Of a DNA stretch of 64,000 bases, positions 1-56,800 are shown piece after piece (position 1 is the first letter of the stretch; each line of letters opens with the position of its first letter). Origin of the DNA: Thalia democratica (taxonomy: Eukaryota). The translations under genes were made by a program, and so were the position numbers. The stretch is from positions 18,972,001 to 19,036,000 of the forward strand of contig OZ241827.1 of NCBI GenBank assembly GCA_965202585.1, in the 5' to 3' direction. The notes beneath the pieces were generated by a model that worked only from the letters and a program-made list of their open reading frames with translations, was not told the DNA's origin and did not search any database.

Positions 1-3000
1 AGTTTGTAATCACTTGAAATATCTGAAATTACTAGAATAGCTTTTCTGACTTTTTTTTTTTTGATAATGTTTTTACTTTATATACTCAATTTTAATAGTA
101 CTATTCAAATACATACTAAAGATAGGAAAAATTGTAAAACTTTTTAATCTGGTACTTTTTTAGAAAATTTAATAATTGTTGAACGTGATGTATTTAAATG
201 ATACAAATTTGAATCAGTTAATAAAAGAGTTTTCTGGTCCTCAAAACTTTTTGCGCAAGCTTTGTAATAAAGAAAGAGAAAAGTGTTATAAAGAAATTGA
301 GAATTTAGAGAAAAATTTTGAGGAAACTAAAGAAAACATAATAAAGAATGTGAAGAACATTTTTCAGTACAGCACTTCAAACTTCAAAACTCCCTCTCCA
401 AACTTCAAGTACAAACTCGAACTGATGAATAATGATGATCCAGATTTTATGATTTTAAAAAGCTCGCTTGATAAAGGTTCTGAAGTACCTACCTATTCAG
501 AGACTACGACAAGTAAAAAACTAAATGCACTTAAACAGAAAAAACTTGTTTACAAAATTTAAAGGGTAAAAGCTAATGATAAAGATATAATTGAGAAGAA
601 AAATTCTGAATCTTCTAGTGTACTTTTACTTCATGGAACAAAAGGGCCATGTGTAGAAGGTATATTGAAAGAAGGATTCGGACCATCTCAATCTGGAAGT
701 TATGGCCCAGGAGTATATCTAACTAACAGTGTTTTTTATGCTTACAACCTTGGTAATAGTTTTGTAAACGATGAGGAAACTCCTAAAAACTTGAGTTACT
801 TGTTTGTAAATAAAGTTAAAATGACTAATACAAATGTAGTACCAGCAAAATTAAGTAAAGACAAGCAGGGTACCAATATAAATAAAAGTAAGTCTTCATT
901 TGCATCTCTTAAAATTACTGTCTTTATTCAAAAAGGAAAGAAAAGGACTAGTAATAGTAGTTCAACAAGTCAACAATCAGAAAAAAGTTTAGAAGACTAT
1001 GTCAATAATAAACCATTCCTAAAGCTTTTTAAAGGGTTTAATAAAATATTATCAAGTTTCGAAGACTCCCCTCAGGACACGCTTGATAGTCAAAAGAACA
1101 AAATTATGGAAGGTGCATTTCACTGTGATATATTAAAATTAAAAGTAGCTGTAGCCCATCATGATTTAGTTACTCCTGCATATCTGATAGAAGTTGAAGT
1201 TAAACAAAATATACTATGTATGAAATCTTTAGTGCAAATGTTTGGTAAACAAGCTAATACAAAAATAAAACCTCATAGTTTGTCTAAAGTTTCAATAGGA
1301 GAAACTTGTTTGAAAACAACAAGCGACTATACTGCAGAACAGTTTTATTCAGAGTTAGAAGCGGAAATAAATTTAAACCAACGAAAAAAAGTAAACTTTA
1401 TAAAATCTCAATTTGATCATAAAATTGTTTCACTAACTCAACAGTTATCTTTTGAAGTAAGCAGTCTTTTGAAATTAAAATGTGATAGTTCTATGATGTA
1501 TAAGACTGAACTTTTGAAATCTACAGATGACGATTATCATTTTATCTTACGTTCGATAAATGATAAAAAATCTCAAGTTAACTATGAAGCTCTACTTATC
1601 TTTAGAATTAATTATGTTGATCAAAATCAACTTAAAAAAATTCAAAATTTTGACCTCAATATTCACGGAGTTAAATCTGACAAAGTTTTAAATGTACTTA
1701 AGTCTGGTTATCCAAAAGATTGGAAATCTTATCATGAACAGTGCATAAAAAATTGTTTCGCTGAGGACAATTTACTCACAAAAAACTGCTCTTGTAGAAC
1801 GTCTAAAATGTTAACAAAAGAAATTTCAAAAGGCACTTGTTATTCTAAAGTAGACGGTGAACCAAAAAAATTGTCTTTTGTTTTTGTTGTAGGCTACGAA
1901 AAAGAAAATATAAAAAGTGGTTTCAATGTTAAAAAAAAATTTTTATCAGAAGGCAGAAACCGGGATAGACCTAAAAATATTGTTTTAGACAGCAGAGGTT
2001 GTTCAATTTCTTCTGGTTCTTTTATACGTCCGAAAAACAAGATCCAATCACTTACAGTAGGGATGGTACCTGCATATTTGATTATATTTAAAGCTTAATA
2101 TAAAAATATAGGCAAAATAGTTCTGAATTTGAACAATCTTTATTTGGTTATCAAATGTCTAACAGAATAGCATTTTCTTGAAATATTTAATTTTTTAAGT
2201 ATTGTAAGTACATTAAATAGGTGAAGAATTTTTTTAACGAAAAAATGTTAGAATATTTATATTTTTTACTCTTATATAAAGAATAATGTATTATTTGTTT
2301 AACAAGTCTAGGTTCTCTTTTAAAACTTAATTTTTTTTATGATTCATTTGGTTTGAAGATTGTAAATTTATAATTGACAGTTTCGTTTTTTTATTCCTAA
2401 ATTTTGCTGAATATATTTTCTGTAACTAACTTTGTATAGCTTTCTTTTCATATAATAAAATGAAATTACTTTCTAATATTATCTTAAAGTTCGTGATATC
2501 TTTTTCTCGATGTTTCTTAGTTTCTGAATTTCGTCAAATAAATTAGTTTTCATGCAATACAATAAACTTTTTATAAAAACATTATTCAAAGTGTTGTTTT
2601 ATATAAGTGTTGTAAAATTTAATGTTGTTCTTACAAACAAAGCAACCTTTTTAGCTAATATGTAACAAGTAATAAAATATATTAAAATATTAGTTTTTGA
2701 AAAAAAATGTTTAGTTTTATCTCAATATACATTAATATTTCTGACAGGTAAAACATTGAGTATGGTTTTTAAGGCTGACATATTTTTAAATTCTAACTAG
2801 CCTATTTTTCAATTTCTAGGTTTTTTAACAAATGTAGTTATACTTATTCTTGTTTATATCTTTAGTATATCTTACTAGTATATATAGTTTAATACTCTAC
2901 TAAAACATATTTTAAAATAGATAAAAGATTAGTGATTACTAAATAACAATGTTTTATGATTTTAAGTATTAAAAGATATAAAAACAGGAAGACATTTGTC

Positions 3001-22137: not shown

Positions 22138-25100
22138 CAGTGGTCGGCAGGCAGTTGGTGGTCGCGGGCCAAATTTCAAGCTTACAAAGTCTTCGCGGGC
22201 CGCAGTTTTAGTTTTAGTGACGTTTGAATAATCTTTTCGTTTTAGTTTTAGTCACACTAGAGAAAAGTTTTAGCTATACATAATTTGACTATTTAAATTA
22301 AATTAAATAAAATTATAATAAAATTTACATTGACTAACATACTTAAGTGTTAATAAACTATGTACTTACATAAGCACTTACTAAGTTAAATTTAATACTT
22401 TTATAATTTTACATACAATTTAACTCTCTATAAAAACCAAACTTGAAAGACAATTTATTAGTTACTTTTATATATCTGTTATATTACCAACCCCTTTTTT
22501 CATATTTCTAAAAATATTAACTGCAAAAAAAAGTTTTTGCGTGTTAAATAGTTTACATTCAAAAAAAAATTTAGTAATTAGTTATTTAATAAAATTAATA
22601 CCTGTTTGTATTATAGAAAGCTAGAACAAATTTTTTAACATAATTAATTCAGAATACTTAAATAAAATATCTTATTAGTAACTAGTCTTTTACATGGTTG
22701 TCACTTAAAAAGCAAAAATGTCTGAGTTGTATCAAACCAGCCTAAGTTCATTAAAAGTTTAAAAAGCTAGTAAATCGTTGTAAATCAAGCTTAAGTACCT
22801 AGTAAAAATATCATCATCATTAAAAAGTACACAAAGTGTAAAAAACAAGAAAAAACTACAATTAGTAAACTACACTACAGTCATAAAAACTATTCTGGGA
22901 ATTCTAAGATTTATTTAAAGTGTTTGAAATAAAAGTTTCACACACATCTGAGTTTTCAAGCTTTTAAAATAGCCTGTTTGTGTAGCAACCCAGTTAAAAC
23001 AAAGTTCACAACATAAAGAAATAACGAAACTTATTAACAGTAAACAAATTACCTTCCAAAAAAAATATAATTCAGCTGGAATGGACAATTAACTTTCTTA
23101 AACATTTTTAACAAAAGTATAAAACTTAATTGAGTCATTAGCGAAGGGAAAAACCTCTTTTTTATTAAGCATTACAACAATTCTTTATCTGCAATAAAAA
23201 ATTAAAAATATTAGTTGTAAAATAAAAGACGAGCAACAAAAAAAAAACGTTAGTTAGGAGTTATTGCGAGAAACGATAAAAAAACAAATCACCAAAGTCA
23301 GTTCCAACAAAGCACATGATTATCTTCAGTAACTACAGAATTATCAAAAAAAAGTTGATAAGGCAAGTTATAAAGTAGCAAAATTTGTTATTAATAATAA
23401 GATACCGTTTATAATTGAAAACTTTTTTAAAGAATTTTTGTTGGCAGTAATGAAAAACTTTTGTTAATTTCTTCAATGACAACAAAAAGTCCTATTTAGG
23501 AAATGCATTGAGGTTATAAAGTCGCATAAATCAAATTATGACTTTAATCAATATGTTGAGATGAGAGCACTGATAGAAAAACTATTGCTCATCTGAGAAT
23601 TTTTATTAGAGATGTTTTTTTAACTTTTACACTTTAGTATGATTTCTTCATTTAGTGCAAACACGAAGCACAACAATCGGTGAAATTTTACAAGTAAAGG
23701 TGCAATGCACCAAAAGTTTTTAGAAGTACAATTCCTTCTTTTATTTTTAGTATAAAGTTTAATTAAAGTTTAAAAAGTGTCTTATAAAGTATATCAATAT
23801 TAAAAAAACACTGTTAAGCTACTTTAGTATATTTTTTAATAAAGAAATGTTTATTTGCTAAATTTTTTGTGTCAAATCGAAATTTCACTACTTTACATGT
23901 AAAAATTGTTTGAAACTCCAGACTTTTTCAAAAATTCTCAAATTCAAGTTTTTTTCCAAAATTTTTTAGCATAAATTTTCAAGTTCAAAGCTTGAACTTG
24001 ATATATTATAACATATATTATAACTGAAACTAACACTTTGGGTTGAGCAAAACTTACATCATTAGTTTAATTTGCAACTCTTTTAAGCAAAAAAGCCAGC
24101 CTGAATTAACAAAAACATTCCGGATATTTTGTATACAAAAAACAATTCTAGTCAAAAACTTATAAAATGATTTAGTTGGCCTGAGATTTGAAGTCTTCAA
24201 ATAGTGATAGTCTGAGAGTGTGTCAATGATTATAAACTATCCCTAAGTCTAGTTTATATTAAATAGGTAGCTCCAAAAAACAGAAAATGTGTGTATTGAT
24301 ATGCAAAGCATAAATGTTAACTTAGTTTGACAAAATCAATGTTTGAAAAATGAAAATGTATACCTAACAAAAACTATATTAGTTTATGTCATAAATATTG
24401 TTTTAATTGTGTCTGTACAAATTTAGATATTACATGTAGAAAAAACAAACTTAGAAAATTATGCATAAACTAAACTTAAACTAACTAAAGTATTTTATAA
24501 AAAGTGGTTTAAAATATGAGCATTTTTTTAAGTTTGTGTGCATATAAGTTAGTTTTTGTGCAAAGAAAACTTCTAAAAAATTAAAATGTGTCAAAACAAA
24601 ACTTAAATAAACCTTTTTTTTTTCTTATTACTATGTTATTTTAAATGTTTTTACACTAAAACATAAAATTTACAAATAAAAAATATATAAAAGAAACTTA
24701 GGTAAAAAAAATATTGGAAAGAATATATAAGCTATTAAAAAATGACACTTTATTTAATTACTGTGCATTGCTTTTGTACAAAATGGAAAACATTTGCATT
24801 TATTTATTTGATAAATAGGTATTATATAACTAACTTATTAAATTCAAGCACTCTTTTTTCAGATAACTACTTGCTGTTGTAAAAAAGAAGTTATTATGAA
24901 ACTCAGAAAAATATCCTGTTAGAATGCTAATCTGTCTTTTTCACATTTTTAAATTAAAGTAGTAACTTCTTCTAATTATTTTTAAATGTTTTACAGAGAC
25001 TTAAAACCAAACTAAACAAATTAAATCGAATTACCGAAAAAAAAATTACTTGAAATATATTTTTGCTCAGCGGGCCACTTTTACATGCTCGCGGGCCACA

Positions 25101-25212
25101 AAATTTTCTTTCGCGGGCCGCATTCCATTCAAAAAAATAACGTGCTCGCGGGCCGCAGATTTACCCTTCGCGGGCCGCAATTGGCCCGCGGGCCGCAGTT
25201 TGCCGACCTCTT
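22138..25212 (+). mobile_element. Non-autonomous hAT (Buster-type) element, copy 1, with decayed transposase N-terminus
   Basis: Left TIR cagtggtcggcag, right ...tttgccgacctct, subterminal gcgggcc arrays. Relic QLEWTINF...IKHY (~23073) and ASYKVAKFVINNKIPF...KEFLL (~23363). Colinear with 41864-45122. Confidence 0.88.
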
Positions 25213-28200
25213 TAGTCTAGAATCTAGACTAAAGACTTTTTTTTCAAAATTAGTGTTTGTTGAGTAGCATTTGAAAAGTCAAAGATTTAAAACGATAAAA
25301 ATAAAGTTTTAAGTAAAGTAAATTTTATTTCTGTTTCTAACATATCTTATATATAACATTGCTAGTTATTTGTTTTATGCTTGAACTGCTTATTACTACA
25401 GCTTTAACCTTTTCACAATAATTGTTTTAACTAAAAAAGCTAGTTGGAGTTATAGATGATAAAAAAATAAGAAAACTGAAAAAGAACTTTTTCATTGTCA
25501 AATACTATCAATTAAAGATAAAAATATTAGTTATTTATGATTAAATTAAAGTTTAGGTTATTTTTTTGGAAATAATGTTACAAAAGTTTTTATAAATCGC
25601 TAAAACAAGGCGTTCACAAGTATTTTGTTTTATAATTATTAAAAAGTTTATATAAAAAATAAATTTTCAATCGCTTTTTTACAACTACTTTTTACTTTGA
25701 ATACTTGTTAACTATAAGTAAATGTACTAAACAAACTTTTTTAAACAATCAGTAGTTGTAATGAAGCTTTATAATAAGAAAAAACCGAAATTAAAACAGT
25801 TTTTTTAGTACAAAAGTTAAACTTACAATCTCAAGTATAAGTTACATTATAAAGTAAATTATTAGTTAGTTTTCGTCGAAATAAAGTTTTTTTATTTAAT
25901 CAATTCAAATTCAAACTTTAACAATTGATATACTTTGAATACCTAAAAATGTTTAAAACAACTAAATCACAGTATAAAATTTTATTGTTTGAAAAAAAAC
26001 TCGTACAAGGAAAAGTATATTTGGTTAAAGTCTAAATACTTAAAAATTTTGTTAATAAGAAGTTACTATAAAGATATATAAAAAATTAATAATTAACAAA
26101 CTAAGTTAATGCATTTCTTTTTTACATGAACAAATATTTTTTTGAGTAATAAACTACAATATGATAGTTTAGATACATTAAAGATTATTCAGTTTCGAAG
26201 AAGTTAAATAATGAATGTTTAAAAAAAATTTAATATTAACATATTGGTAATATGAAATAGCTTTATAAAATCCATTTGAATAAAAAGGATTTCAATTTTT
26301 TAAGGTTAATATTTTCATATTTTTATCTCGCCGAAATGAGACGGTAATTATTTATGCTTGTGGATATTATTCATAAACAATTCAATTCTTTTTTACTTAG
26401 TTTTCGATTTTAATATAGTTTTTCTATTTTTAAGAAAATAACTCTTGAAAATTAAACACTACTGCATTATATAAATTAGTAAATATCTATATTATTTGAA
26501 CTTCTTTTCTTTTCAAAAGATAAACACTTTTAAGCTGGTTCTTAAAGTATTTTAAAGAACATAAAATTAATTTTGAAATTTTATATAAATTATAAATTTT
26601 TTTTGCAGGAAAGTTTTCTAAATAAAAAATTTATTTAAATTTACAATTAAGTTTTTGATAACTAACAGTTTAACCACTCATTCTCGACATAAATAATAAC
26701 AAAACTGCATAATGATTTATTAGTTATCAGGAGACACCTCAGCAAAAAATTGATCAAAATCCTTTCAATATTAAAAAGTTTGAAAATCAAAAAAAAAAAG
26801 TTTTTGAGCCTTAATTACGATTTTGTGTCCATAAAACAAAAAAAAAAGGAATACCAAGAGTCATATATAAATTTAATTAAAGATAAGTAAAATGCATTAC
26901 AGCTAAAACTTGCGAAAGCATGAAATGTTTTAATGGTGATGTTATCGAAATATTTCCTGCCGATAATTTAAAATATATTATACCTAATGAACTAACAGCT
27001 TATGTGTCTATATGTTCTACAAATAAATGGAACCTTAATAAAGCTCTTAAGAGTTAGCCTCGCAGAATATTGTAACATTAACATTAAATGCTTAATTGGT
27101 AAATTAAGTGTTAGTATAATGAATTTAATTTCTGAATTGAATAAGCAAATAGATAATCTGTTTTATAATGTTAAGAAGGAATTTATTTGTCAATATGATT
27201 TTGAGTTTTCTCAATCTCCCAAAACTAAATAGCCAACAAATCGATTTTTTTTTTAATTTTTACTATCTGTTTCAAATTTCTATCCAGTGGTCCCTACCAA
27301 AAGATCTAGTTTAAGCCAGCCTGCTGTTGTTTTGTCATTTAATAAAAAGCTAAAATTATTAAAAACTTTACATACGACCTAGAAAATCAATTATTCTTCC
27401 CAGTCTAATTAAAAAATAATAAACAATTTTTTTACTAGACAAGGCATCATTCGAGAAATTTTTACTGTTGCCAAACATGAAAAACAAAAAAAAAAACATT
27501 ATTAGGTATTATGATGTGCAGAGCGGAACGCAATGAAATCTCGCAATTAATAGAGGAGATAGTCAACATTTAGCTTTTTTAGTAAAAATAATAAGCTTTA
27601 AATGCAACTATGAAACAACCCTAAAAATACAACAAGAACTGTAAAATTTCAGGAAAAGACAACCAATTAAAACATGAAAATGTGTTTAAAATGAAAAAAA
27701 CGACCAAAAAATGCAGAATCAATATTTTGTACTAGCAAAAATCTTATTCAAGGTGAACGAACGAATAAATTGCTGTTTTCGAGGGCTTGCTATGAAGTTG
27801 ATACAAAATACACAACAAAAAATATTTGAGCCGAATGACGCTGGACTCGACAAGATTAGAGAACAATTCGAGTTAAAACTAGAAATATAAGTAAAACGAT
27901 GTACTACAAAATGCAAAAAAAAAAAACAGTCAGTCAAAATTTATTTGTCTCTAGAATATCTTACGTTATGGAGATGCACCTGTTATCAGAATCAACTGTT
28001 TCTCATTAAAACTGATCTGTAGAGTATTGAAAGTGATGAGTGCCATCTGATCAAACTGACGAAACGGGTCAACATTTCTTCACAACATAAAAACGTAAAC
28101 AGTTATACAAAAAATTTTAAGCTGCAATAAAGCCACCTTGTTTAAGGCAACGGTGATGTACTTTAATGGGAACAAAAAGACCTGTTTTGATGCGAAGATG

Positions 28201-34796: not shown

Positions 34797-35696
34797 CTAG
34801 GGCTCGTCACCAACTGAATTGAGTCTTGTTTTCTGAAACCGATTTCGCATGTTTCGTGACGTCATATGAACTCTGTCGGGCGTGTAAGTAATTGGATCTC
34901 TAACATCTACTTCCCTGTGCCTGGCAGCTGCTTCCCTGTTTTGCCTTATCAGACTTCCTAGTCGTGCTCGTACTAATGCAATTTCTGCTTGGTTTTCCAA
35001 ATTTTCATTTGAATTGAGTCTTGTTCTCGGAAACCGATTTCGCATGTTTCGTGATGTCATTCGCATGTCGGGTATGTAAATGATTTGATGTCTGGCACCT
35101 GCTTCCCTTCGCCTGACATCTGCTTCCCTGTGTCCCCTTACCTGCATTCCTAGCTGTGCTAATATATTTACTGCTTGGGTATCCAAATTTCCATTTAAAA
35201 TATTTTCGCTCGATAACAAGTCGCTTGGTACCATTACTCTCTGTCTAATAACTTCGGTAGGTTGTGTTCGGACTCTATCGGGCGTATAGGTAATTGGATC
35301 TCTGACATCTGCTTCCCTGCGCCTCGCATCTGACTCCCTAAGTTCCCTTTGCAGAATTTCTGCTTGTGCTAATGCATTTTCTGCTTGGGTTACCATATTT
35401 TCATTCGAATTATCTCCGCTCGAAAAAGTTTCGATTGGTAATGGTATTCTCTGTCTAATGTCATCCAACAAATGCGACGGCATTGCTGTAGTAGGTGTAA
35501 CACTTACTGCGGTTGGTGGATTGACTATTATCCTATCCGGATCATTCAAAACAGGCACTGGCGGGTTGCTTTGCAATGGTGGTGCGTCTGCCTCTTGTAC
35601 ATTATTTTGTAGTTGACTGGTCGATCCACTTTGGCCTTCTGAAGATATAGCTCGTGCAGCTTCCGGTTGCTCGTTTGGGTTGGCGTTGTTACTCAT
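34797..35696 (-). CDS. 299-aa orphan protein with ~65-70-aa internal repeats; Arg/Pro/Asn-rich with only one Lys
   Basis: Long single-exon ORF, markedly GC-richer than its surroundings. Repeats (R/H)RE(A/V)DVRDPITYTPDRV and MTSRNMRNRFxxTRLNS. A TATA-like TATTTATAAA lies ~45 nt upstream. Confidence 0.75.
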   Translation of the reverse strand: MSNNANPNEQPEAARAISSEGQSGSTSQLQNNVQEADAPPLQSNPPVPVLNDPDRIIVNPPTAVSVTPTTAMPSHLLDDIRQRIPLPIETFSSGDNSNENMVTQAENALAQAEILQRELRESDARRREADVRDPITYTPDRVRTQPTEVIRQRVMVPSDLLSSENILNGNLDTQAVNILAQLGMQVRGHREADVRRREAGARHQIIYIPDMRMTSRNMRNRFPRTRLNSNENLENQAEIALVRARLGSLIRQNREAAARHREVDVRDPITYTPDRVHMTSRNMRNRFQKTRLNSVGDEP

Positions 35697-38600
35697 TTTG
35701 TTTACAACCTGTTTGTTTGTTTTTTGTTTGTTAAAAGTGTTTATAAATATAGTTTCAAAATCTGTTTAATCCATGTAAAAATTTAATTCAGTTGAAATTA
35801 AATGACTTGTTTGTTCTTAAAATACTAGAATAACAATTTGAAAAATGATGAAGTGTGAAAAAAAAACATGATGTAAACTTTGTATAAGACTTCTTCTTTA
35901 TATCAAATTTAAAAATTCGGCATTTTTCAAATAAAGAAGTTATTCTGATTTTTTTTTTTTTCTAAAAACTGTTAAAATATATATCTTTTTAGTCCTATAA
36001 TGTTATACAACATTTTGTTACACATATTTTTTATAAAGTTGTAGTTTATAAAATGTAGAATAAACATATTTGTATAATATGTATCAATAAATAATATATA
36101 TCAAAATATTTCTATAGCATATCTTTATATTTTGTTCGGTATATCTGTAAATTATATAGAATAAAAAACTAAATGCTTTAACTTCTTTGCACCAACTAAG
36201 TTATTTAAGTAAAAGTTTGTTTTAGTCAAATGTGGGTTAACTTTTTATATTCACTTTTAACAAATATCAAAGTATAATAAAACTATAGGTCTATAGCTTA
36301 AAACATAACTTTTACACCTGCATTAAAATATAAATTTTGAAATTACAATTTTAGAATTTATTTAAAAATTAGATTAATATATTCACCGTTCAACATTTAA
36401 AATATAAGATTCAAAATTCAACGAAGAATTTCCTTTGCAACACAAACCTCTTGAGTAAACTTTTAAATGTTCATTTACTTAATTTACTAACAATAATATT
36501 AAGAATAAGTCTATAACATCTCTTTTAAAAAATTATATTAAAATTATTCAGTTTATTTTATCATAAATATTCCGGTGTAGTGGTTTTCGAGTGTTTTTTT
36601 TTGATTTAGAAAATTTTATTAGCTTAGGTATATTTCCCTTATCCATTAATTTTATAAGATAGCAATTTTTTACTGTTGCAAAATAGTCATTACAAGAAAT
36701 TGATGAAAACGTTTTTTTAGAAGATAAGTATTAGTTTACATGCATAGCAATAAAAAAACTGAACTATGTATTGGGTATTCTGTTTTTATGTATATTTTTT
36801 ATATTCTGGAGTTTATCTAAACATGTTAAGCAATGTTATTCAGCTTAAGATAAGAAGTGAATCTCTTGAACACGATTAAGAATTACGCATAAAAAATCTT
36901 TTTGCATGACACATAAGGTTTTATCTACCGCCATGAAACGAACAGCAAACGGAAAATTAAACTTAAAATAAGTTAAGAGGAACAAGTTTATAAAGTATTT
37001 AGTGTTACGTCAGATTAGTAATTTAGTATTCTACCAAATTTCGTTTAAAGCATTTAGCATAAAAAGTTTGTTTTATTTTGACTAGATGGTCGGTATTCAC
37101 AACCTTTACGTTCGGTAGGTAACTTATTTTCCTTATTTTATTATTTTATAAAACTATCTATTTTTTCTCTTTTCAATTTTCTTTAACTTTTATTTTACTA
37201 TCGTGCAAAAAAGATTCACACTTAATAAACCTTTTCCCATTTAAATAAATAAGCTAATTACATATGTTAATAAATTAGCTTTGATTTCTTACTAATTGTT
37301 CAAAAGTTGAATGTTGAATTTACAATTGTGTAGTGTATACCTGAACAAAAAACAAAGTAAGTTTGTTGGTTTACTTCACAAAATTGTTAGATAGTTGTTA
37401 ATTTAGCCAATTGTTTAAGTTGTAAATTATTTTAATACCAGAGTGACTTGGTATTTGTATAACCATACACTTCTTAAGATCATGTTCCAAAATACAAATG
37501 AAAGTATTTGTAATTAGGTTAAGAATGTGCAATATTCTTCAAGTTTATAATTTCATTATCATAAAATAATCTGCAGGGTAGCTTTAAATTAAAATACAAA
37601 GAATTTTCCCAAGTCTATCTCCCCTTTTCTTATTTAAATCAATCTAGTTAAATCTGTAGAATATATGTTTTGTTTTACAAGTTAATAGTTATGCATTTTT
37701 TAAGTTTTATACCTTGATCAAATATTTAATTCTTGTAAATTATTTGTTTTACAAATTACCAATGTGACTGTTTAGCAGAGGATCATTAAAAATTCATTAA
37801 AAATTGAAAACATTTTTAGATATTTAGCTCACAATTTTTGTTGGAAAACTAAAAGTTTTTTTTGGTTAGTTTTTAATCTATTAAAATTATTATTTTAAAT
37901 AATTTTTAGCCCTCAGTACTTAGTTATAACTTTGAAATAAATTCCACATGTGTTTAGCTGTTTTTTATTAATAAAATAATGAAACTTTTATTGACATATT
38001 ACTATTTCTTTATTAATTTTAGAGTAGGGTTTCATAATGAGGGCAGTGAAGTATCTTAAGGGTTGAGTTTAGCTTTTAGCAGGACAACAAAAAAGGCGAA
38101 AAGTAACTAAATGACTTACTGACTAGTAAAAGATAGATAATGAAATTGGGGGATGTTTAATACTAAATTTATTTACAGGGCTACTTAATGATTATATTTT
38201 TACCTACAAGCACAATTACACTTAATTTTACTTAGCTTATTTAAAATAACATTTTTATTTTCCATTAAATTCCTAGAATACTTATTTTTTCAATGCAACA
38301 GGTATACTATAAATAAAGTTAAGATAGGTAGCTAAACTAAACTAAAAAAAAAAAGTTTATTCAATGCTGCTGTTCACCAAAATGTTTTATCATTATTACT
38401 CATTTATGTTGAGTTATATTTTCAAAAAATCAGGATAAAGTTCAAATTTAAAACTTTTATTTCAAAAAACTATATCAAAATGTTGTTTTTGTTTTTACAC
38501 ATAAGTTTTCTTATCATGAGTTAAATCAGTATTTGGAGCTCTGTCCTGATATTTTACTAATACTTTTTTATTACTAAAGCTGACAAAAAGTTTTACCTTA

Positions 38601-38909
38601 ACAGTTTTATCAATAGTTCAGTTTCTAACAAAAAACTATTATAAATCCTTGTTTTTGCTTAAGTAAGTATTAATAAGAATTACTATAGTGTGACATAAAA
38701 GTTACAGTGTTTAGTATTTTAGGAACAATAAGTTAAACTTAAAAACTAAGCAAACTTCATTTGATAAACAACAGTTGTACTTGTAAAACTAGACATTTCA
38801 GTGCTGCAGTAGACTAACATATAATAAGTTAAAAAAACTATGTATAAAAATTTTATTAATCAGTCAATATAGTTCTTTTACAATTTTTTACAGCACCTTA
38901 TAATAAATC

Positions 38910-39140
38910 ATGATCGAAGTTGTATGCATCCATCGTCTTGGCTTTAAAATCCACGTCGAAGTAAGCGAACATCACACTGTTGGCGACCTCAAGAAGATTA
39001 TTGAAGCTAAGACTACAGTCAGTCAGGACTTGATCGTTTTAAGGATGTTGGGCGTAATCTTAAAAAATCACATACAATTAGATGATTATGAAATAGACGA
39101 TGGAACAAGTCTTGATATGTTGTATTTAGGACGTAATTAG
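38910..39140 (+). CDS. UBL5-like: Divergent UBL5/Hub1-like ubiquitin-fold protein (intronless paralog)
   Basis: Gap-free by-eye alignment to human UBL5 (MIEVVC..RLG.K...TxGDLKK...IVL...DYEIxDG), about 35/73 identities. AATAAA at ~39170. Confidence 0.85.
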   Translation: MIEVVCIHRLGFKIHVEVSEHHTVGDLKKIIEAKTTVSQDLIVLRMLGVILKNHIQLDDYEIDDGTSLDMLYLGRN

Positions 39141-39499
39141 TATGAAATAGTTTATTCGCTTTGAAATTTAATAAAATAAATCTATACATTTATAAAACTA
39201 GTTATATTTATGTTTCATGTTTTTTTTTATTTAAATGTTGTTAACTAACTTTAAATAGACTATTTTGAAAAATTTATATATATTTCAGTATATTTATTTT
39301 ATAAAATTTATAAAAAATATAAAATTACGTTATAATTTTTTAACTTCAAAAACAAAAACAAAATTATTTTTTGTTAAACAAGCTCGCTTACAGAAATTTT
39401 GGTTTTCTGAAAAAATCTTGTCTGTTCATTGGCCATTATTATTCAAGTTAAGCCTGGTAATTCTCCACATAATTAATTTTGTTATTTTAAAATTTTCAT

Positions 39500-39717
39500 T
39501 TACTGTCAAATAGTTTTTAAAGTTCACTAAACTACTAATTACCTCAAACTAGTTTTAAATTTTGATAACTTTTTTTATTATACTTCAACAAAATCGCATA
39601 CAAGGTTTAAAAAATCCAAGTTTTTCCAGGTTCTTTTATAACATCTTAAAGTTCAGTTTTTTGGCAAAATTTTCAAATTTATGGTTTTCCTGGTTTTTTA
39701 GTTTTTTGGCTATCCTG
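39500..39717 (-). mobile_element. MITE family A fragment
   Basis: Minus strand starts caggatagcc, followed by aaaaccaggaaaacc...aacctggaaaaacttgg motifs as in 15878-16272. Confidence 0.4.
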
Positions 39718-40029
39718 TTGAAAAATACTTCGCTCATAATTAGTAATTTAACTTGAGAAAATTTAAAATTTTGTCTTTAAAATGCATAAGATTTATTTTT
39801 ATCAATAAAAACATTAAAATACTAAAATAATTTTATTTAAAAATGAAAATAAATATTTATTTGACACGTTTAAAATCCTGTTTCAAGGAGTTAAAAGCTG
39901 AAACAATTAAAAAGATTATCAGTATATAATTAGTCTACTGAATGAAAATTTAAATACTTGATAAACTTGGTATAAGTTTTCCTTGCTTTTTCTTCAATTA
40001 TATATGTTTAGTAAATGTATGACAAAATA

Positions 40030-40281
40030 AATAACTAATCAGGATATCTTCTTTGAAGCAATTTTTGGCTAAAATAAGTTTCAAAGTATACTAATTGTTA
40101 TTAATTTTTGAATATCTTAAAAAATGTTTAAAATTTTACAAAAAGAAAAAAAAAATGGCTTGTAGATATTTATAAGACCAACATAAATTTTTTCTTTGAA
40201 ATTTATAAACTTTCTGAGATATAATCTTTCAATTATTTTTTTAGAATTTGAGTTGTCGGAATTTGAATTGTCATGTAACCC
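40030..40281 (-). mobile_element. MITE family B, truncated copy inverted relative to 32806-33173
   Basis: The rc reads gggttacatgacaattcaaattccgacaactc...atatctacaagcca, matching the 32806 copy. Confidence 0.75.
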
Positions 40282-41863
40282 TATTAAGGAATGATGTAAT
40301 TTTAATTATCTAATGTTGACCTTTGTATAAATTCAAGATTGAATGTGCAACTAAAAAAAAAGCAATTTTTGGAAGTATACAAGGGTTATTAGTTTTTAAT
40401 TATAGTCCCTTTTATAGTAACTACAAACTTATACCTAGCTTATCTTAATATATAGGTTTTTATTCATTTCCATTAGCTAAATATGTATAATTGATAAAAA
40501 AATAGAAGTAACAACTCTAAAGTGGTACAAACTGATCCATTTTATTTTATTAACTGTATATATGTATACTAACTCTTGCATGTTTAAAAATTAACTTAGA
40601 GTATTAAAACGTCTGTAATAAACTTAGGCATATAATTATAATATTTTAAATGTGTTTCTACAGTTAAAAAAGTGATATAGTAAAACTATTAAAAGAAAGT
40701 TGGTGGAATATGTATAAACTAAACAGCTATTGTTTCAAATGTACTAGTGTAGTTAGAAGTCACACATAAATTGTAAAAAGTGTTAAAAAAAATTTTTTAC
40801 GTTGTGTTTAGACAAAACATACATTAAAACAAATTTCTTTAAAATTCTTATTTTTGTGTTAACCTTTAATTTGATAAACTTAAGACTTTATATAAGTAAA
40901 AGATATAAAAGGACATTTCCTAATTTAACAGAACTTTTTTTGCTTAGTTAAAAAATCTGTTTTTGTTTCCTAAGCTTAAGCAAAACGAAGCTGCATTTAT
41001 TTTTAGACTAACTTTTGTTTTTGTTTGGATACTTAAATCTTTTTTACTATCATTCAAATATTAAAACAACCATAAAAATTTATGCTATAAGTGTAAGAAT
41101 ATGTGTTTAACAATATTATTTTGTTTTACTCAAGAAATAGTGTTAATATATCAAGTTAACTTGTGACTTTTAGTGACTTTACAATAATAAATGTGACTTT
41201 TAGTACACAATGTATATTTTTTTAATTATCAAACAGTATAAGCATATTTTTAATTGCATTAATTGATACTTATACTTGGTAGAATCTTTTACACATTGAA
41301 AAAAATAATAGTTTTAGCTTTTAAGTGAAACTTTGTGTAAAATTTGGCCTGACGACAGCTTTTAAAACTTTACTAGTTGAACATTGTCGATTGAAAACCA
41401 ATGGCCAACATATATAAACAATGAATAACTGCTATAAAAACATTTGAAGCACATATAATACTTTTTACATATGCTAAACTGAATAGGTTATTCAACAAAA
41501 GTATGACTACATCACTAAAAAGCTATCCTTTAAATTTTAGCAAACGTTTTGAAACTATGATTTTTTATAAAAATATAAACAAATTTCAGTAGGAAAAATT
41601 ATAACTGCTTAGTAAAAAAGAATTTTACCTATGAGTTGGATGCTCATAATAATAATAACTTAACGTAACAATGTCTTTATTGCCACCAAGGCTAGGAGCC
41701 TCACTGATTATCTTTGAAATTTCCTCATGCTCGGCAACCTCGTCAGATTTCAGGTTAGCAGTAGCCTCGGAACAACTCATTTCGGTTCGAGACCGCGTGC
41801 GCGGAGGTTTTAGTGTTAATACCTTTTTTAGGGGTTTGAAAGACATATTTATATAATCTATAT

Positions 41864-44800
41864 CAGGGGTCGGCAGGCAGTTGGTGGTCGCGGGCCAAAT
41901 TTCAAGTTTACAAAGTCTTCGCGGGCCGCAGTTTTAGTTTTAGTGACATTGGAATAATATTTTGGTTTTAGTTTTAGTCACAATTAAAGAAAGGTTTTAC
42001 TTTTTTTTCACCTTATTATTTTAAATGACTTTTAGCTATACATGGAATGCCTATTTAAATTAATATTTATTATAATAGAATTTACATTGACTAATATACT
42101 TTAGTGTTAATAAACTATGTACTTTTAAAGCACTTAATAAGTTAAACTTAATACTTTTGTATTTTTACTTACAACCTAACTATCTATAAAAACCTAACTT
42201 TAAAGACAATTTATGGTTACTTTTATACATTTGTTATATTATCAACCCTTTTTTCATATTTCTAAGAATATTTACTTCAAAAGAAGTTTTTGCGTCATAA
42301 ATAATTTACACTCATTAAAAAATTTATTAATTAGTTAACTTAATAAAATTAATACCTGTTTGTATTCCAGAAAGCTAAAACAAACTCTTTAACATAATTT
42401 ATTCTCGATAAATTTTAATAAAATATCTTATTAGTAATTAGTATTTTACATGGTTGCCACTTAAAAAGCAGAAAATGTCTGAGTTGTATCAAACCAGCCA
42501 AAGTTTATTAAAAGTTTAAAAAGCTAAAAAATAGTTGTTAATCAAGCTTAAGTACCTAGTTAAAATATCATCATTATCAAAAAGTACACAAAATGTAAGA
42601 AAACAAGAAAAATTACAATTAGTAAACTACACTACAGTCATAAAAACTATTTTGAGAATTGAAAGATTTCTTTAAATTGTTTGAAATAAAAGTTTCACAC
42701 ACACCTGAGTTTTCAACTTTTAAAATAGCCTGTTTGTGTAGCAACCCAGTTAAAATAAAGTTCACAACATAAAGAAATAACGAAGGTTATTAATAGTATA
42801 TAAATTACATGCCAAAAATATATAAGTCAGCTGGAATGGAAAATTAAGATTCTTAAACAAATTTAACAAAAGTATAAAATTCTATTGAGTCATTAGCGAA
42901 GTAGAAAAACTTATTTTTTATTAAGCATTTTAGCAACTCTTTATCTGAAATAGGAATATTGCATTTAAAAATAGTAATTGTAAAATATGAGACGAGCTAC
43001 AAGAATAAAAAAACGTTAGTTAGGAGTTATTGCGAGAAACGATAAGAAAAAAAAAACACCAAAGTCAGTTCTCCAACAAAGCACATGATTATCTTCAGTA
43101 AATACAGAATGATCAGAAAAATTGTAAAGGCAAGGTATAAAGTAGCAAAACTTATTACTTAAAATGAGATGCTTTTTATAATTGAAAACTTTTCTAAATA
43201 ATTTATGTTGGCGGTAATGAAAAGCTTTTGTTTATTTCTTCAATGACAACTAGAAGTCATGTTTAGGAAATGCGTTAAGGTTATAGCCGCATAAATCAAA
43301 TTAGTACTTTAATCAATCTGTTAACATGAGACTACTTATAAAAAAAAACTATTGCTCATCTGAGAGTTTTTATTAGAGATGTTTTTACTAACTTTGACAT
43401 TTTAGTAGAGTTTCTTGGTTTAGTTTCAAAGCGATGCACAACAAATGGTGAAATTTTACAAATAAAGGTGCAATGTACCAAAACAAAGTTTTTGGAACTA
43501 CAATTCCTTCTTTTATTTTAGTATAAAGTTTAATTAAAGTTGAATAAAATGTCTTAACAAATATATCAATATTAGAAAATACTGTTAAGCTACTTTTATA
43601 TATTTTATAATAGAAAAATATTTATTTGGTAAGTTTTTTGTGTCAAATCGAAATTTTATTTCTTTACATGTAAAAATTGTTTGAAATTCCAGGTTTTTCA
43701 AAAATTCTTAAACTAAAGTTTTTTTTCAGAATTTTTAAGCATAAATTTTCAAATTCAAAACTTTTCCAAGATTCAAGTTTTTTGGCTGATTGTTTACACT
43801 TAAATGTACACAACAATATAAATATTATTTTGAATTTTATTAGCTGCAAGACTTAAAATTTAACATTCATTATAGCTCAAACTAACACTGTTGATTGAGC
43901 AAAACATACATCATAAGTTTAATCTGCACTTTTTCAAGCAAAGAAGCCAGCCTGAGTCAACAAAAACATTCCTGATAGTTTTGTATACAAAAAGCAATTA
44001 TAGCCAAAACCTTAAAAAGTGACTTAGTTGGCCTGAGATTTAAAGTCTTCAAATAGTGATAGTCTGAGTGTTTGGCAATTTTTAGTTGTTTATTTGCTTG
44101 AACTTAAACTATTTTGATTAACAATGTACAAACTTGATAAACTTACCATCCCTAAATCTAGTTTATGTTAAATAGGTAGCTTCAAAAAACAGCAGTTGTG
44201 TATATTGATATGCGAGGCATAAAAATTAACTAAGTTTGACAAAAAAAAAATGTTTGAAAAATTAAATTGTATACCTAACAAAAATATACTTCAAAAAAAA
44301 TGTGTGTGTACAATTTAGATATTACATGTACAAAAACAATGTTAGAAAATTACGCATAAACTAAACTTTAACTAACTAAAGTATTAAATAAAAAGTGGTT
44401 TAAAATATGAGCATCTTTTTAAGTTGGTGTACATAGAAATTAATTTAAAGTGCAAAGAAAACTTTTAAAGAATTAAAATGTGTCAAAACTAAAATCAAAT
44501 AAACCTTATTTTTTATTACTATGTTATGCTAAATGCTTTTACCCTAAAATGTAACACTTACAAATAAAAAATCTATAAAGGAAATTTTAAAGGAAATTTA
44601 GGTATAAAAAATATTGAAAAAGAATATCTAAGCTATAAAGAAATGACACTTTAGTTAATTACTGAGCATTACTTTTGTACAAAATGGAAAACATTTGCAT
44701 TTAGTTTGTTTAATAGATAGGTATTATATATCTAAATTACTAAATCCAAGCACTCTTTACACTCTTTTTTCAGATAATTACTTGCTGTTGTAAAAAAGAA

Positions 44801-45122
44801 GTTATTATGAAACTGAGAAAAATATCCTTTTAGAATGCTAATCTGTCTTTTTCACATTTTTAAACTAAAGCAGTAATTTCTTCTAATTATTTTTAAATAT
44901 TATAAAGAGACTTAAAACCAAATTAATCAAATTAAATCAAATTACCGAAAAAATTTAACTTGAAATATATTTTTGCTCAGCGGGCCACATTTACATACTC
45001 GCGGGCCACAAAATTTTCTTTCGCGGGCCGCACTCCATTCAAAAAATTAACATGCTCGCGGGCCGCAGATTTACCCTTCGCGGGCCGCAATTGGCCCGCG
45101 GGCCGCAGTTTGCCGACCCCTG
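41864..45122 (+). mobile_element. Non-autonomous hAT (Buster-type) element, copy 2, 3259 bp
   Basis: Perfect 12-bp TIR CAGGGGTCGGCA, perfect 8-bp TSD ATCTATAT (41856-63/45123-30, NNNTANNN), subterminal gcgggcc arrays and the same transposase relic as copy 1. Confidence 0.95.
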
Positions 45123-45174
45123 ATCTATATAATTAGGTCTAATTAATTGAGCTAATGTTGATCTATTATATACA

Positions 45175-53824: not shown

Positions 53825-56800
53825 GTTTGTAATCACTTAAAACATCTTAAATGGCTGTAGTAGCTTTTCTATCTACTAATTTTTCTGATGATGTTTTTAC
53901 TTTGTAAATAAGTTTTGATTAGTGTTATACGAAAATATACTAAAGTTAGAAACATTTTAAAACCATTTTATCTGGTACTTTTACAGGGAAGTTTATAATT
54001 AACAAACGTTATGTACTTAAATGATAGAAACTTGAATCAGTTTATAAAAGAATTTTCTGGTCCTCAAAACTCTTTGCGCAAGCTTTGTAATGAAGAAAAA
54101 GAAAAGTGTTGTAAAGAAATTGAAAATTTAGAGAAAAATTTTGAAGAAAGTAAAGAAGATTTGATAACGGAAGTGAAGGAAATTTTTCAGTATAACACTT
54201 CAAACTTCAAAACTCCCTCTCCAAACTTCAAGTACAAACTCGAACTAATGAATAATGATGATCCAGATTATATGATTTTGAAAAGCTCGCTTGATATAGA
54301 TTCTGAATTCACTACCTATTCAGTGATTGCATCAAAATATTATTTAAATGCACTTGAACAGAAGAAACTTGTGTACAAAATTTACAGAGTAAAAACAATT
54401 AATAAAAATATAACTGAGAATAGAAACTTTGATACTTCTAGTACACTCTTTCTTCATGGAACAAAAGGGTCATGTGTAGAAGGTATATTGAAAGAAGGAT
54501 TTAGACCATCACAATCTGGAAGTTATGGCCCAGGAGTGTATTTAACTAACAGTGTTTTTTATGCTTTCAAATATGGTAATAGTTTTGTAAAAGATGAGGA
54601 AACTCCTAAAAAATTAAACTACTTGTTTGTAAATAAAGTTGAAATTACTATTTCAAATGCAGACTCTGCAACTTCTAGTAAAGACAAGCAGGGTACAAAT
54701 TTAAGTAAAAGTAATTTTTCATTCGCATCTCCTAAAACTACTGCTTATTATGAAAATGGAAAAAAAAGGACTACTTCTATAAGTTCAACAAGTCGACAAT
54801 CAGAAAAAAGCTTAGAAGACTATGCTAATAATAAACCTTTCTTTAAGTTTGTTAGTAGTTTTCCCAAAAAATCAACAAGTTTCAAAGATTCACCTCAGGA
54901 TACGTTTGACAGTCAGAAGAACAAAATTCTAGAAGGTACATTTAACTATGATTTATTTAAAACAAAAATAGCTGTAGCCCATCATGACTTAGTTACTCCT
55001 GCATATCTGATAGAAGTTGAAGTTAAACAAAATGAAGAAGAAATTGTTAAAAATGTACTATACAGCACATTAAGTGTGCATAGCTTTAGTAAACAAGCTA
55101 ATACAAAAATCGAACCTAAAAATCTGTCTAAAAATTCAGAAGATAACAATTGTTTGAAAACAGCAAGCGACTATACTGCAGAACAGTTTTATTCAGAGTT
55201 AGAGTCGGAAATAAATCTAAACCAAAGAGCAAAAGTTGACTTTATAAAATCTCAATTTGATCACAAAGTTGTTTCACTAACTCAACAATTATCTTTTGAA
55301 GTAAGCAGTCTTTCGAAAACTACTAGTGATAGTTCTATGATGTATAAGACTGAACTATTAAAATCTACAGATGAAGATTATCAGTTTATCTTACGTTCGA
55401 TAAATGATCAGAAAACTAAAGTTAACTCTAAAGCTCTAAATGTATTTAGAATTATTAATCTTGATCAAAATCAACTTCTAACAATTCAAAATACTGAACT
55501 TATTCTTCACGGAGTTAAATGTGGCAAAGTTATGAATGTACTTAAGTCTGGTTATCCAAAAGATTGGGAATCTTATAATAAACAGTGCAAAAAAGATTGC
55601 TTTGGTGAAGACATTTTTCCCTCAAACAGCTGCTCTTGTAGAGCGTCTAACATGTTAACAAAAGAAATATCGAAAGGCACTTGTTACTCTAAAGTAGACG
55701 GTGAAATAAAAAAATTGTCTTTTGTGTTTGTGATAGGCTACGGAAAAGCAAATACAAATAATGATTTCGATGTTGAAAAAACTTGTTTATCTGGAGGCGG
55801 AAACCAGAAAAGACCTACAGATGTTGTTTCAGACAGCAGAGGTTGTTCAATTCTTTCTGGTTCTGAAAACGAGATCCAAGAACTCACAGTAGGGATGGTA
55901 CCTGCATATTTGATTATATTTGAAGCTTAATATATAAAAATAGTCGATACATTTTTGTTTTTGAACAATGTTTAATTGGTTATCAATTGTCTAACAGAGT
56001 AGCATTTTCTTAAAATAGTAAATTTTCAAGCGTTGCAAGTACACTAGATAGTTAAAGTTCTTTTTTTAACGAAAAAAAGCTAGACTTTTTATATTTTAAC
56101 TTTTTTTTTAAAGGATAATGGAGTTTTATTTAACAAGTATAGGTTCTCAATTATAAATTTAGTTTTACATAATTCATTTGGCTTAAAGATTGTTCAATTT
56201 ATACTTGTTTATTTAATTTTTTTTATTTCTTAAGTTTTGTTGAACAAATTTCTTTCAACTAACTTTTTACAGCTTTCTTTACATATAATAAACTGAATTT
56301 ACTTACCTAAAATATCTTAAAGTTTGTGAAATCGTTTTGTCGTTGTTTCTTAGTTCCTAAATTACGTAGTATAAATTATTTTTCATGCAATAGAATAAAC
56401 TTTCTTTAAAAATAACATTTAGAGTTTTTTTTTAATAAGTGTTGTAAAATCTCAATGTTGTTCTTACAAATAAAGAAACCTTTTTAGGTTATATGTAAAA
56501 ATTGATAAACCGTTTTTTTAAAATATTAGTTTTTGAAAAAAATATTTCTTTACTCAGAAATTTAATTAAATAATTATTAATTTCTATGTTTTCAAAAAAG
56601 TGGTTATACTTATTCTTGTTTCTAAATTTGTAGTTTTGTTTGTAAAAATTAATTAGTATACTTTTACTACGTAAGTACAGTGTAAATCTAATATAACATA
56701 TTTAAAATTATATTAAAGACCACTGAATACTGAACAACAAAATTTGATGCTTTTAAGCATTAAAGAATATACAAACAGAAAGATATCTTTAATGGAAAAC

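What the first reader, a model, noticed from the sequence alone, without database searches (positions are those of the whole stretch)
38910..39140. UBL5/Hub1 paralog with both known spliceosome-binding residues swapped
Seen: intact 76-aa single-exon ORF, only about half identical to human UBL5, with D22H, H63D, loss of the K45-K46-W47-Y48 patch, and the C-terminal YYQ replaced by LYLGRN. Known: UBL5 is highly conserved, and in Hub1 D22 binds the Snu66/SART1 HIND motif while H63 binds Prp5. Inference: the core residues are kept while the functional surfaces are remodelled, suggesting a neofunctionalised retrocopy with new partners. It has no di-Gly, so standard conjugation is not predicted.
Basis: partly seen in the sequence, partly recalled or inferred. 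Interest (0 to 1): 0.7.

Follow-up and report, generated by a model that had tools for sequence, protein, structure and literature searches.

The report
Divergent three-copy UBL5-like gene family
This short gene is one of three copies of a strongly altered relative of the splicing helper protein UBL5; selection has kept it intact next to a normal UBL5 gene, but no transcript was found and its function is untested.

Summary
It is not a lone retrocopy. It is one of three intact copies (92-95% aa identical), on two chromosomes, inside segmental duplications tens of kb long. Two truncated fragments lie elsewhere.

A canonical UBL5 (73 aa, D22, KKWY, H63, YYQ) sits on another chromosome and is also intronless. 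A frameshifted dead copy shows what decay looks like here.

The family is under purifying selection. dN/dS among copies is 0.13-0.36. Seven of 16 substitutions are nonsynonymous where 75% are expected (p=0.008). The ORF varies half as much as its flanks (p=3e-4), and it has no indels where 3.2 are expected. Neutral drift to its 40% divergence from canonical UBL5 would leave it open and indel-free with P<=6e-5.

H63D, W47L, Y48G and the LYLGR tail are fixed in all copies. D22H is private to this copy and not confirmed in independent data. The HIND-binding face is mostly retained, and the opposite (Prp5) face is rebuilt.

No RNA run holds it, and no public protein is more than 53% identical.

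Verdict: a probable lineage-specific functional gene of unknown role.

The parts
38910..39140 (+). Coding sequence (76 codons plus TAG) of the divergent UBL5-like protein. This is the window copy, with private V18, H22 and M46.
   Evidence: ORF. Best PDB matches are UBL5/Hub1. AF2 beta-grasp model with pLDDT 94.2. Top structural matches are 4pyu, 1m94, 3plu and 3plv at TM 0.89-0.94. Selection tests.
38884..38893 (+). Splice-acceptor-like TTTTTTACAG ending 16 nt before the ATG. Candidate 3' splice site or trans-splice acceptor of a 5'UTR (inferred).
   Evidence: Invariant in all three copies (alignment A1). Similar ...acag motifs lie 12-25 nt before the ATG of the PARP-like and orphan neighbours and about 19 nt before the canonical UBL5 ATG. 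No transcript data are available.
39170..39180 (+). Two overlapping AATAAA poly(A)-signal motifs about 30 nt after the stop codon (inferred function).
   Evidence: Read. The TTTAATAAAATAA block is kept in the window and copy A; copy B keeps AATAAA and carries a 13-nt insertion inside the block.
35010..40066 (.). Core of the segmentally duplicated block that carries the gene. It is colinear with C1:94.78 Mb (copy A) and C1:94.32 Mb (copy B). Wider homology spans about 32.6-57.7 kb of the window.
   Evidence: blastn of the window against 40-kb stretches around the two sister copies. Identity is 85-92% to A and 86-87% to B.
34797..35696 (-). Co-duplicated head-to-head neighbour: an orphan repeat protein. 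Listed as context only; no functional link is shown.
   Evidence: Present at all three loci but only about 61% aa identical, with a different repeat number. No Pfam or PDB match.

Best explanation
The ORF is a member of a small, lineage-restricted family of protein-coding genes descended from UBL5/Hub1: three intact copies plus two truncated relics. After an old duplication of the intronless UBL5 gene, one lineage changed very fast (about 50% aa divergence, while the host's canonical UBL5 stays about 82% identical on average to UBL5 of other eukaryotes). It then settled under purifying selection and was later copied, together with tens of kb of surrounding DNA, to three loci. These steps are shown.

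The following steps are inferred. The protein is a non-conjugatable beta-grasp adaptor that acts by non-covalent binding, as UBL5 does. It keeps most of the helix-binding (HIND) face used by UBL5 to dock on SART1/Snu66. The opposite face has been rebuilt: H63D, W47L, Y48G and K45R, a new C-terminal tail, and a net charge of -4 instead of +1. UBL5 uses that face for the helicase Prp5/DDX46. So the protein probably no longer stimulates Prp5. It either docks on HIND-type helices without transmitting the UBL5 signal, or serves a new partner. Its low GC3 (0.40, against 0.72-0.90 for housekeeping exons) and the lack of RNA evidence suggest weak or conditional expression.
For: The own-genome search finds three intact copies plus a canonical UBL5, and the DNA census finds exactly three full copies and two 99-nt fragments. 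Copies share flanks over tens of kb. NG86 dN/dS is 0.13, 0.36 and 0.15. Tests against the gene's own flanks: variable sites 6.5% vs 14.0% (p=2.7e-4); 0 indel events vs 3.2 expected (P=0.04); 7 nonsynonymous of 16 changes vs 74.8% expected (p=0.008). Synonymous sites against the canonical gene are saturated (pS about 0.8). Neutral simulation to the observed 40% nt divergence gives a joint P(open frame, no indel) of 1e-8 to 6e-5. A real dead UBL5 copy on C6 carries 10- and 18-nt deletions. A second organism holds codons 1-56 with 8 differences and no gaps. The acceptor-like and AATAAA signals are conserved in all copies. The fold is a confident UBL5/Hub1-like beta-grasp. HIND-face residues from PMC4141198 are mostly kept. 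The D22/HIND and H63/Prp5 assignments are confirmed in PMC8790634. D63 and L47-G48 never occur in 148 family representatives.
Against: There is no expression evidence. No RNA run holds any part of the stretch, although other agents report transcripts at other loci of this genome (unchecked). None of the three proteins is in a 15-billion-protein collection, and no relative above 53% identity exists among 1.84 billion representatives, so there is no deep phylogenetic conservation to lean on. Substitution counts are small (16 changes). Gene conversion between copies could account for part of the ORF's extra similarity, though not the excess of synonymous changes. Codon usage is far from that of housekeeping genes. 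The region is decaying and prone to transposon insertion. Binding to HIND could not be evaluated (one search gave no answer). Assigning W47/Y48 to the Prp5 face rests on fold topology, not on a measured interface.
Confidence: 0.6

Rival explanations
1. It is a non-functional relic. An old UBL5 duplicate was functional for a long time, has recently lost expression, and is now decaying slowly. The three copies are still open only because the duplications are young and gene conversion homogenises them.
For: No RNA holder. Absent from all protein collections. GC3 of 0.40 is drifting toward the AT-rich background and far from housekeeping values. Two truncated fragments on C4 show that copies do die. 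Against its closest copy (A) the ORF is hardly more conserved than its flanks (4.8% vs 5.5%). The window copy has 3 private nonsynonymous changes to 2-3 synonymous ones, including loss of the otherwise near-invariant D22.
Against: The excess of synonymous changes (p=0.008), the absence of indels and the halved variability since duplication. All three copies remain intact, as does the segment seen in a second organism. Flanking signals are invariant.
Confidence: 0.2
2. It is a sub-functionalised but still spliceosomal UBL5: a stage- or tissue-specific variant that still binds SART1/Snu66 through the retained D22 face and works in splicing with altered regulation.
For: The family keeps D22 and most HIND-contact residues. 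It also keeps many UBL5-specific surface charges: E3, R9, K13, D26, K28, K29, K52, E61 and D64. In human cells HIND binding is not strictly essential and other surfaces contribute (PMC4141198).
Against: H63D, W47L and Y48G are states never seen in 148 representatives. K17E reverses charge on the HIND face. There are 18 changes at positions that are at least 90% conserved. The window copy has lost D22.
Confidence: 0.12
3. The ORF is only the first coding exon of a larger gene. A donor-like GT inside codon 75 (GAC|GTAATT) would splice the UBL domain onto downstream exons, making a UBL-fusion protein.
For: A GTAATT/GTAGTT motif is present at the same place in all three copies. Several proteins in the representative search carry UBL5-like domains within longer chains.
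Against: The in-frame TAG two codons later and the AATAAA 30 nt downstream are conserved in all copies. Divergence rises sharply downstream (up to 20% against B) with many indels and no conserved open frame within 1 kb.
Confidence: 0.06

Closest known systems
UBL5 / Hub1 (ubiquitin-like protein 5; PDB 4PYU, 1M94, 3PLU/3PLV)
   Same: Same length class and the same beta-grasp fold, with an ungapped alignment over residues 1-72. It is the best sequence match (E 6.5e-16) and the best structural match (TM 0.89-0.94). There is no di-Gly, so non-covalent action is expected. The family keeps D22 and most HIND-contact residues.
   Different: Only 42-56% identical to any family representative, whereas family members share at least 56% and 77% on average. 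D63 replaces H63, L47-G48 replaces W-Y, the di-Tyr tail is replaced by LYLGR[N/S], and net charge is -4 instead of +1. There are 11 substitutions to residues never seen at near-invariant positions. It is multi-copy, and the window copy also has H22.
Processed UBL5 pseudogenes (for example human UBL5P copies; cited from memory)
   Same: An intronless extra copy of UBL5 away from the parent locus.
   Different: Not disabled. Synonymous sites are saturated relative to the parent. dN/dS is 0.13-0.36. It was duplicated as part of large DNA segments. The parent gene is itself intronless, so retroposition cannot be inferred. The genome's real dead copy on C6 looks quite different, with frame-breaking deletions.
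Retained divergent UBL paralogs such as SUMO4 or ISG15-type lineage-specific UBLs (analogy only)
   Same: A ubiquitin-fold protein that diverged from a conserved parent and sits among fast-evolving RING and PARP-domain genes.
   Different: There is no sequence relationship beyond the shared fold. No conjugation motif is present. No evidence of induction or of an immune role was obtained.

Membership tests
UBL5/Hub1 | Beta-grasp fold with UBL5/Hub1 as nearest sequence and structure relatives | tested here: met
   (E 6.5e-16 to human UBL5). (pLDDT 94.2). (4pyu, 1m94, 3plu and 3plv on top).
UBL5/Hub1 | C-terminus without di-Gly, ending in di-Tyr plus one residue (YYQ/YYN) | tested here: not met
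   There is no di-Gly, but the tail is L71-Y72-L-G-R-N/S in all three copies. Only Y72 is kept.
UBL5/Hub1 | Asp22 forming the salt bridge to the HIND arginine (PMC4141198, PMC8790634) | tested here: inconclusive
   D22 is present in sister copies A and B and in organism B's contig. The window copy has H22. Independent data do not confirm the H22 state.
UBL5/Hub1 | His63 surface used for Prp5/DDX46 (PMC8790634) | tested here: not met
   D63 in all three copies. D is never seen at this position in 148 representatives.
UBL5/Hub1 | Extreme sequence conservation (family pairwise identity at least 56%, mean 77%, in the sample used) | tested here: not met
   The paralogs are 42-56% identical to the representatives. 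The host's canonical UBL5 is 62-93% identical to them.
UBL5/Hub1 | Physical binding to the HIND element of SART1/Snu66 | not testable with these tools
   Complex prediction with host SART1 HIND exon 2 returned 'no answer', which is no evidence either way.
Conjugatable ubiquitin-type modifiers | Exposed or processable C-terminal Gly-Gly | tested here: not met
   The sequence ends G74-R75-N76 and contains no GG anywhere.
Processed pseudogene / young retrocopy | Loss of parental introns, poly(A) remnant, target-site duplication, neutral evolution | tested here: not met
   The parent has no CDS intron. No A-tract follows the ORF. Copies are segmental duplicates. dN/dS is 0.13-0.36 and neutrality is rejected.

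The most novel reading that the evidence does not exclude
A lineage-specific 'half-UBL5': a selected, multi-copy derivative that keeps the HIND-helix docking face but has replaced the Prp5-activating face. It would act as a natural uncoupler or decoy at the tri-snRNP, or as an adaptor for a new HIND-like partner. It may be conditionally expressed together with the surrounding fast-evolving PARP-domain and RING genes as part of a stress or immune module.
Probability: 0.2. Interest if true: 0.6.

Novelty: new variant of a known kind. Interest (0 to 1): 0.4.

Why it matters
UBL5/Hub1 is one of the most conserved and usually single-copy ubiquitin-like proteins. Its two binding faces, HIND/Snu66 and Prp5, have so far been separated only by engineered point mutants (D22A, H63L). 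A naturally selected paralog that keeps one face and rewrites the other would be a ready-made separation-of-function variant, and an example of how a core splicing cofactor can be recruited to a new role. No divergent UBL5 paralog turned up in a full-text literature search. The value is limited for now, because expression and partners are unknown and the family seems confined to one marine lineage.

Tried and rejected
(1) The word-based homologue search found nothing. Exact-product look-ups for all three copies found nothing. Viral and metagenome scans found no relative.

(2) HIND-like motif in the head-to-head orphan neighbour. Its third repeat reads V-R-A-R-L-G-S, which resembles the core M-R-A-S-L-G-L of the host SART1 HIND that I located at C1:84.58 Mb. 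The motif is absent from the orphan's copies at loci A and B, and the orphan has no PDB match. I rejected it as chance.

(3) Complex prediction of the D22-bearing copy with the unaltered second HIND exon of host SART1 gave 'no answer'. This is not evidence for or against binding.

(4) I first read a contig of sample S1 (361 nt, 3 differences, reading I18/D22 next to the window's own 5' flank) as showing that H22 is polymorphic. I withdrew this. The first 51 nt of the ORF are identical in all copies, and the two differences form a closing bubble, so the contig may be a collapsed path between paralogs. H22 is simply unconfirmed. M46 is supported by the majority depth in S1.

(5) Retrocopy hallmarks (A-tract, target-site duplication) were looked for and not seen.

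(6) Technical slips: sequence too long; simulation timed out, rerun.

Full report
OBSERVATION. Pfam sees only the general ubiquitin family (E 5e-9). Against all PDB sequences the best hits are human UBL5 (E 6.5e-16, residues 1-72, no gaps) and yeast Hub1 (4.7e-13), well ahead of ubiquitin (1e-8). H22, D63, R-M-L-G at 45-48 and the tail LYLGRN can be read directly. The 'known' part of the finding is correct: the Asp-22 surface binds the HIND of Snu66/SART1 and the His-63 surface binds Prp5 (PMC8790634; PMC4141198).

THE GENOME HOLDS A NORMAL UBL5 AND THREE COPIES OF THIS FORM. A six-frame search of the window's own 802-Mb assembly found three intact 76-codon copies. They are the window copy (C2), copy A at C1:94,780,046 (95% aa identity) and copy B at C1:94,318,527 (92%). 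A fourth locus on C7 encodes a textbook UBL5 of 73 aa with D22, K45-K46-W47-Y48, H63 and a YYQ end. A search with that canonical protein also found a C6 locus matching in two frames. At the DNA level this copy carries 10-nt and 18-nt deletions, so it is a dead UBL5 copy. A DNA census found exactly three full copies of the divergent form plus two 99-nt 3' fragments on C4.

NOT A RETROCOPY SIGNATURE. The canonical CDS is itself a single exon. It is also intronless on four marine-metagenome contigs, one of them from Tara Oceans, that encode the identical protein and are colinear with its flanks at 78-84% identity. These contigs are genomic DNA of related species. The three divergent copies share homology far beyond the ORF. 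The core block 35.0-40.1 kb of the window is colinear with both C1 loci, and wider homology spans about 32.6-57.7 kb. The copies therefore arose by segmental duplication. No A-tract or target-site duplication flanks the ORF. Origin by retroposition can be neither shown nor excluded, and it is not needed.

SELECTION. Among the copies, Nei-Gojobori dN/dS is 0.13, 0.36 and 0.15, with dS 0.09-0.17. I used the gene's own 2.6 kb of aligned flanks as the neutral standard, with these results:
- Variable sites: 15 of 231 in the ORF against 14.0% in the flanks (p=2.7e-4).
- Indel events: 0 against 3.2 expected (P=0.04).
- Nonsynonymous changes: 7 of 16, where the flank mutation spectrum predicts 74.8% nonsynonymous or worse (p=0.008).

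In comparisons with the most diverged copy, the ORF is the best-conserved 231-nt window of the 3-kb block. Against the canonical gene, synonymous sites are saturated (pS about 0.8) and dN is 0.41, so the split is old. Simulating neutral drift with the local spectrum to the observed 40% nucleotide divergence leaves an open, indel-free frame with joint probability 1e-8 to 6e-5. Contigs from a second organism hold codons 1-56 with 8 differences and no gaps. 'Young processed pseudogene' is refuted. The caveats are the small counts and possible gene conversion, though conversion would not produce the synonymous excess.

WHAT CHANGED AND WHAT DID NOT. In an alignment with 40 diverse UBL5 representatives, the host's canonical protein averages 82% identity (62-93%), representatives share at least 56% with each other, and the paralogs share only 42-56%. 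The paralog consensus differs from the UBL5 consensus at 35 of 73 positions. Eighteen of those are at sites that are at least 90% conserved, and 11 use residues never seen there (N7I, D8H, K12F, K17E, C18I, A32E, Q34K, G36T, K41L, D53N, Y71L). Net charge falls from +1 to -4. Across about 148 representatives, D22 occurs 146 times, position 63 is never D, and W-Y is nearly universal.

D22 is kept in copies A and B and in the second organism's contig. H22, V18 and M46 are private to the window copy. The published HIND-contact set of human Hub1 is M1, V16, residue 17, C18, N19, D22, residue 29, L30 and A33. In the family this set is mostly kept: M1, V16, D22, K29 and A33 are identical, C18I and L30I are conservative, and K17E and N19S are changed. 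The fixed radical changes (K45R, W47L, Y48G, H63D, new tail) lie, by fold topology, on the opposite beta3-beta4 side, which the literature assigns to Prp5. That assignment is an inference. AF2 models the protein as a confident beta-grasp (pLDDT 94.2; the alignment is mostly canonical UBL5). Its nearest solved structures are human and yeast Hub1 (TM 0.89-0.94).

GENE SIGNALS AND EXPRESSION. A TTTTTTACAG ending 16 nt before the ATG is invariant in all three copies, and AATAAA motifs about 30 nt after the stop are kept in all three. Similar acceptor-like motifs precede the ATG of the canonical UBL5 and of the neighbouring genes. That pattern fits 5'UTR splicing or trans-splicing, but this is inferred.

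GC3 of the paralog is 0.40, like its lineage-specific neighbours (0.20-0.40). The canonical UBL5 has 0.78 and SART1 exons 0.72-0.90, in a background of about 24% GC. This fits weak or conditional expression. No RNA run holds any part of the stretch. None of the three proteins, nor anything above 53% identity, exists in the public protein collections. Other agents' unchecked notes describe this genome as a pelagic tunicate with many expanded ubiquitin-system families, and report transcripts at other loci. The lack of RNA support here therefore counts mildly against strong expression.

CONTEXT. The gene lies head-to-head, 3.2 kb apart, with a fast-evolving orphan repeat gene. A RING gene lies 17 kb upstream and a PARP-catalytic-domain gene 15 kb downstream. 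Apart from the RING gene at 21.3 kb, these lie inside the duplicated region (about 32.6-57.7 kb). I found no evidence of a functional link. A HIND-like motif in the orphan proved not to be conserved. A complex prediction with the host SART1 HIND exon gave no answer.

VERDICT. However, it is a three-copy segmentally duplicated family, 'retrocopy' is unsupported, D22H is a private and unconfirmed feature of this one copy, and only one of the two known faces is rebuilt family-wide. It is a new variant of a known kind and of moderate interest. Transcript data would decide it.

Noticed in passing
L022 (G000:C6:37867528-37867718): A dead copy of canonical-type UBL5. It is GC-rich like the functional gene and 67-76% aa identical to it. 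It carries 10-nt and 18-nt deletions that break the frame.
   Followed up: partly
window 41853-45133 and 22138-25214: A non-coding element of about 3.26 kb with 23-nt terminal inverted repeats (ATAATCTATATCAGGGGTCGGCA and its complement) and subterminal TCGCGGGCC repeats. It is present twice in the window and once near copy A, but absent at the matching site of copy B. This looks like a recently mobile non-autonomous DNA transposon.
   Followed up: partly
window 40034-40327: A very high-copy short repeat. Summed contig word depth is 4e4-3e5 there, against a few hundred elsewhere, in all three runs, including the second organism.
   Followed up: no
window 34797-35696 (-), with counterparts in C1:94.775 Mb and C1:94.313 Mb: The orphan 'lysine-desert' repeat gene evolves very fast. 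It is about 61% aa identical between duplicated loci, with 3 repeats here against 2 in copies A and B. In copy B the N-terminal part is in another frame.
   Followed up: partly
window 665-2098 (+) and 54011-55930 (+): Two paralogous ORFs with near-identical 3' flanks. The second has a PARP catalytic domain (Pfam E 6.5e-9). The PARP-like gene is part of the same duplicated block at both C1 loci.
   Followed up: no
L004, L024, L027, L028 compared with window genes: A sharp codon-usage split. Conserved housekeeping exons (UBL5, SART1) have GC3 of 0.72-0.90 inside DNA of about 24-31% GC. Lineage-specific genes of this window have GC3 of 0.20-0.40.
   Followed up: partly
L005 / L006 (G000:C4:13.349 Mb and 13.752 Mb): Two truncated 99-nt relics of the paralog's 3' end (codons 58-76 plus 3'UTR, 88% identical). 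They lie inside a 3-kb segment duplicated at 96% identity, 400 kb apart.
   Followed up: partly
L024-L031 (G000:C1:84.58-84.60 Mb) and G000:C652: The host SART1 gene's HIND element is split by a phase-0 intron (…SIEATNK | MRASLGLAPLEI…). A second set of SART1 exon matches lies on the small contig C652, which may be an unplaced haplotype or a duplicate.
   Followed up: no
L037-L040 (ENA marine metagenome contigs): Four short marine-metagenome contigs, one from Tara Oceans (PRJEB4352), encode the host's exact UBL5 protein, with flanks 78-84% identical to the host locus. Relatives of this organism are therefore sampled in ocean metagenomes.
   Followed up: partly
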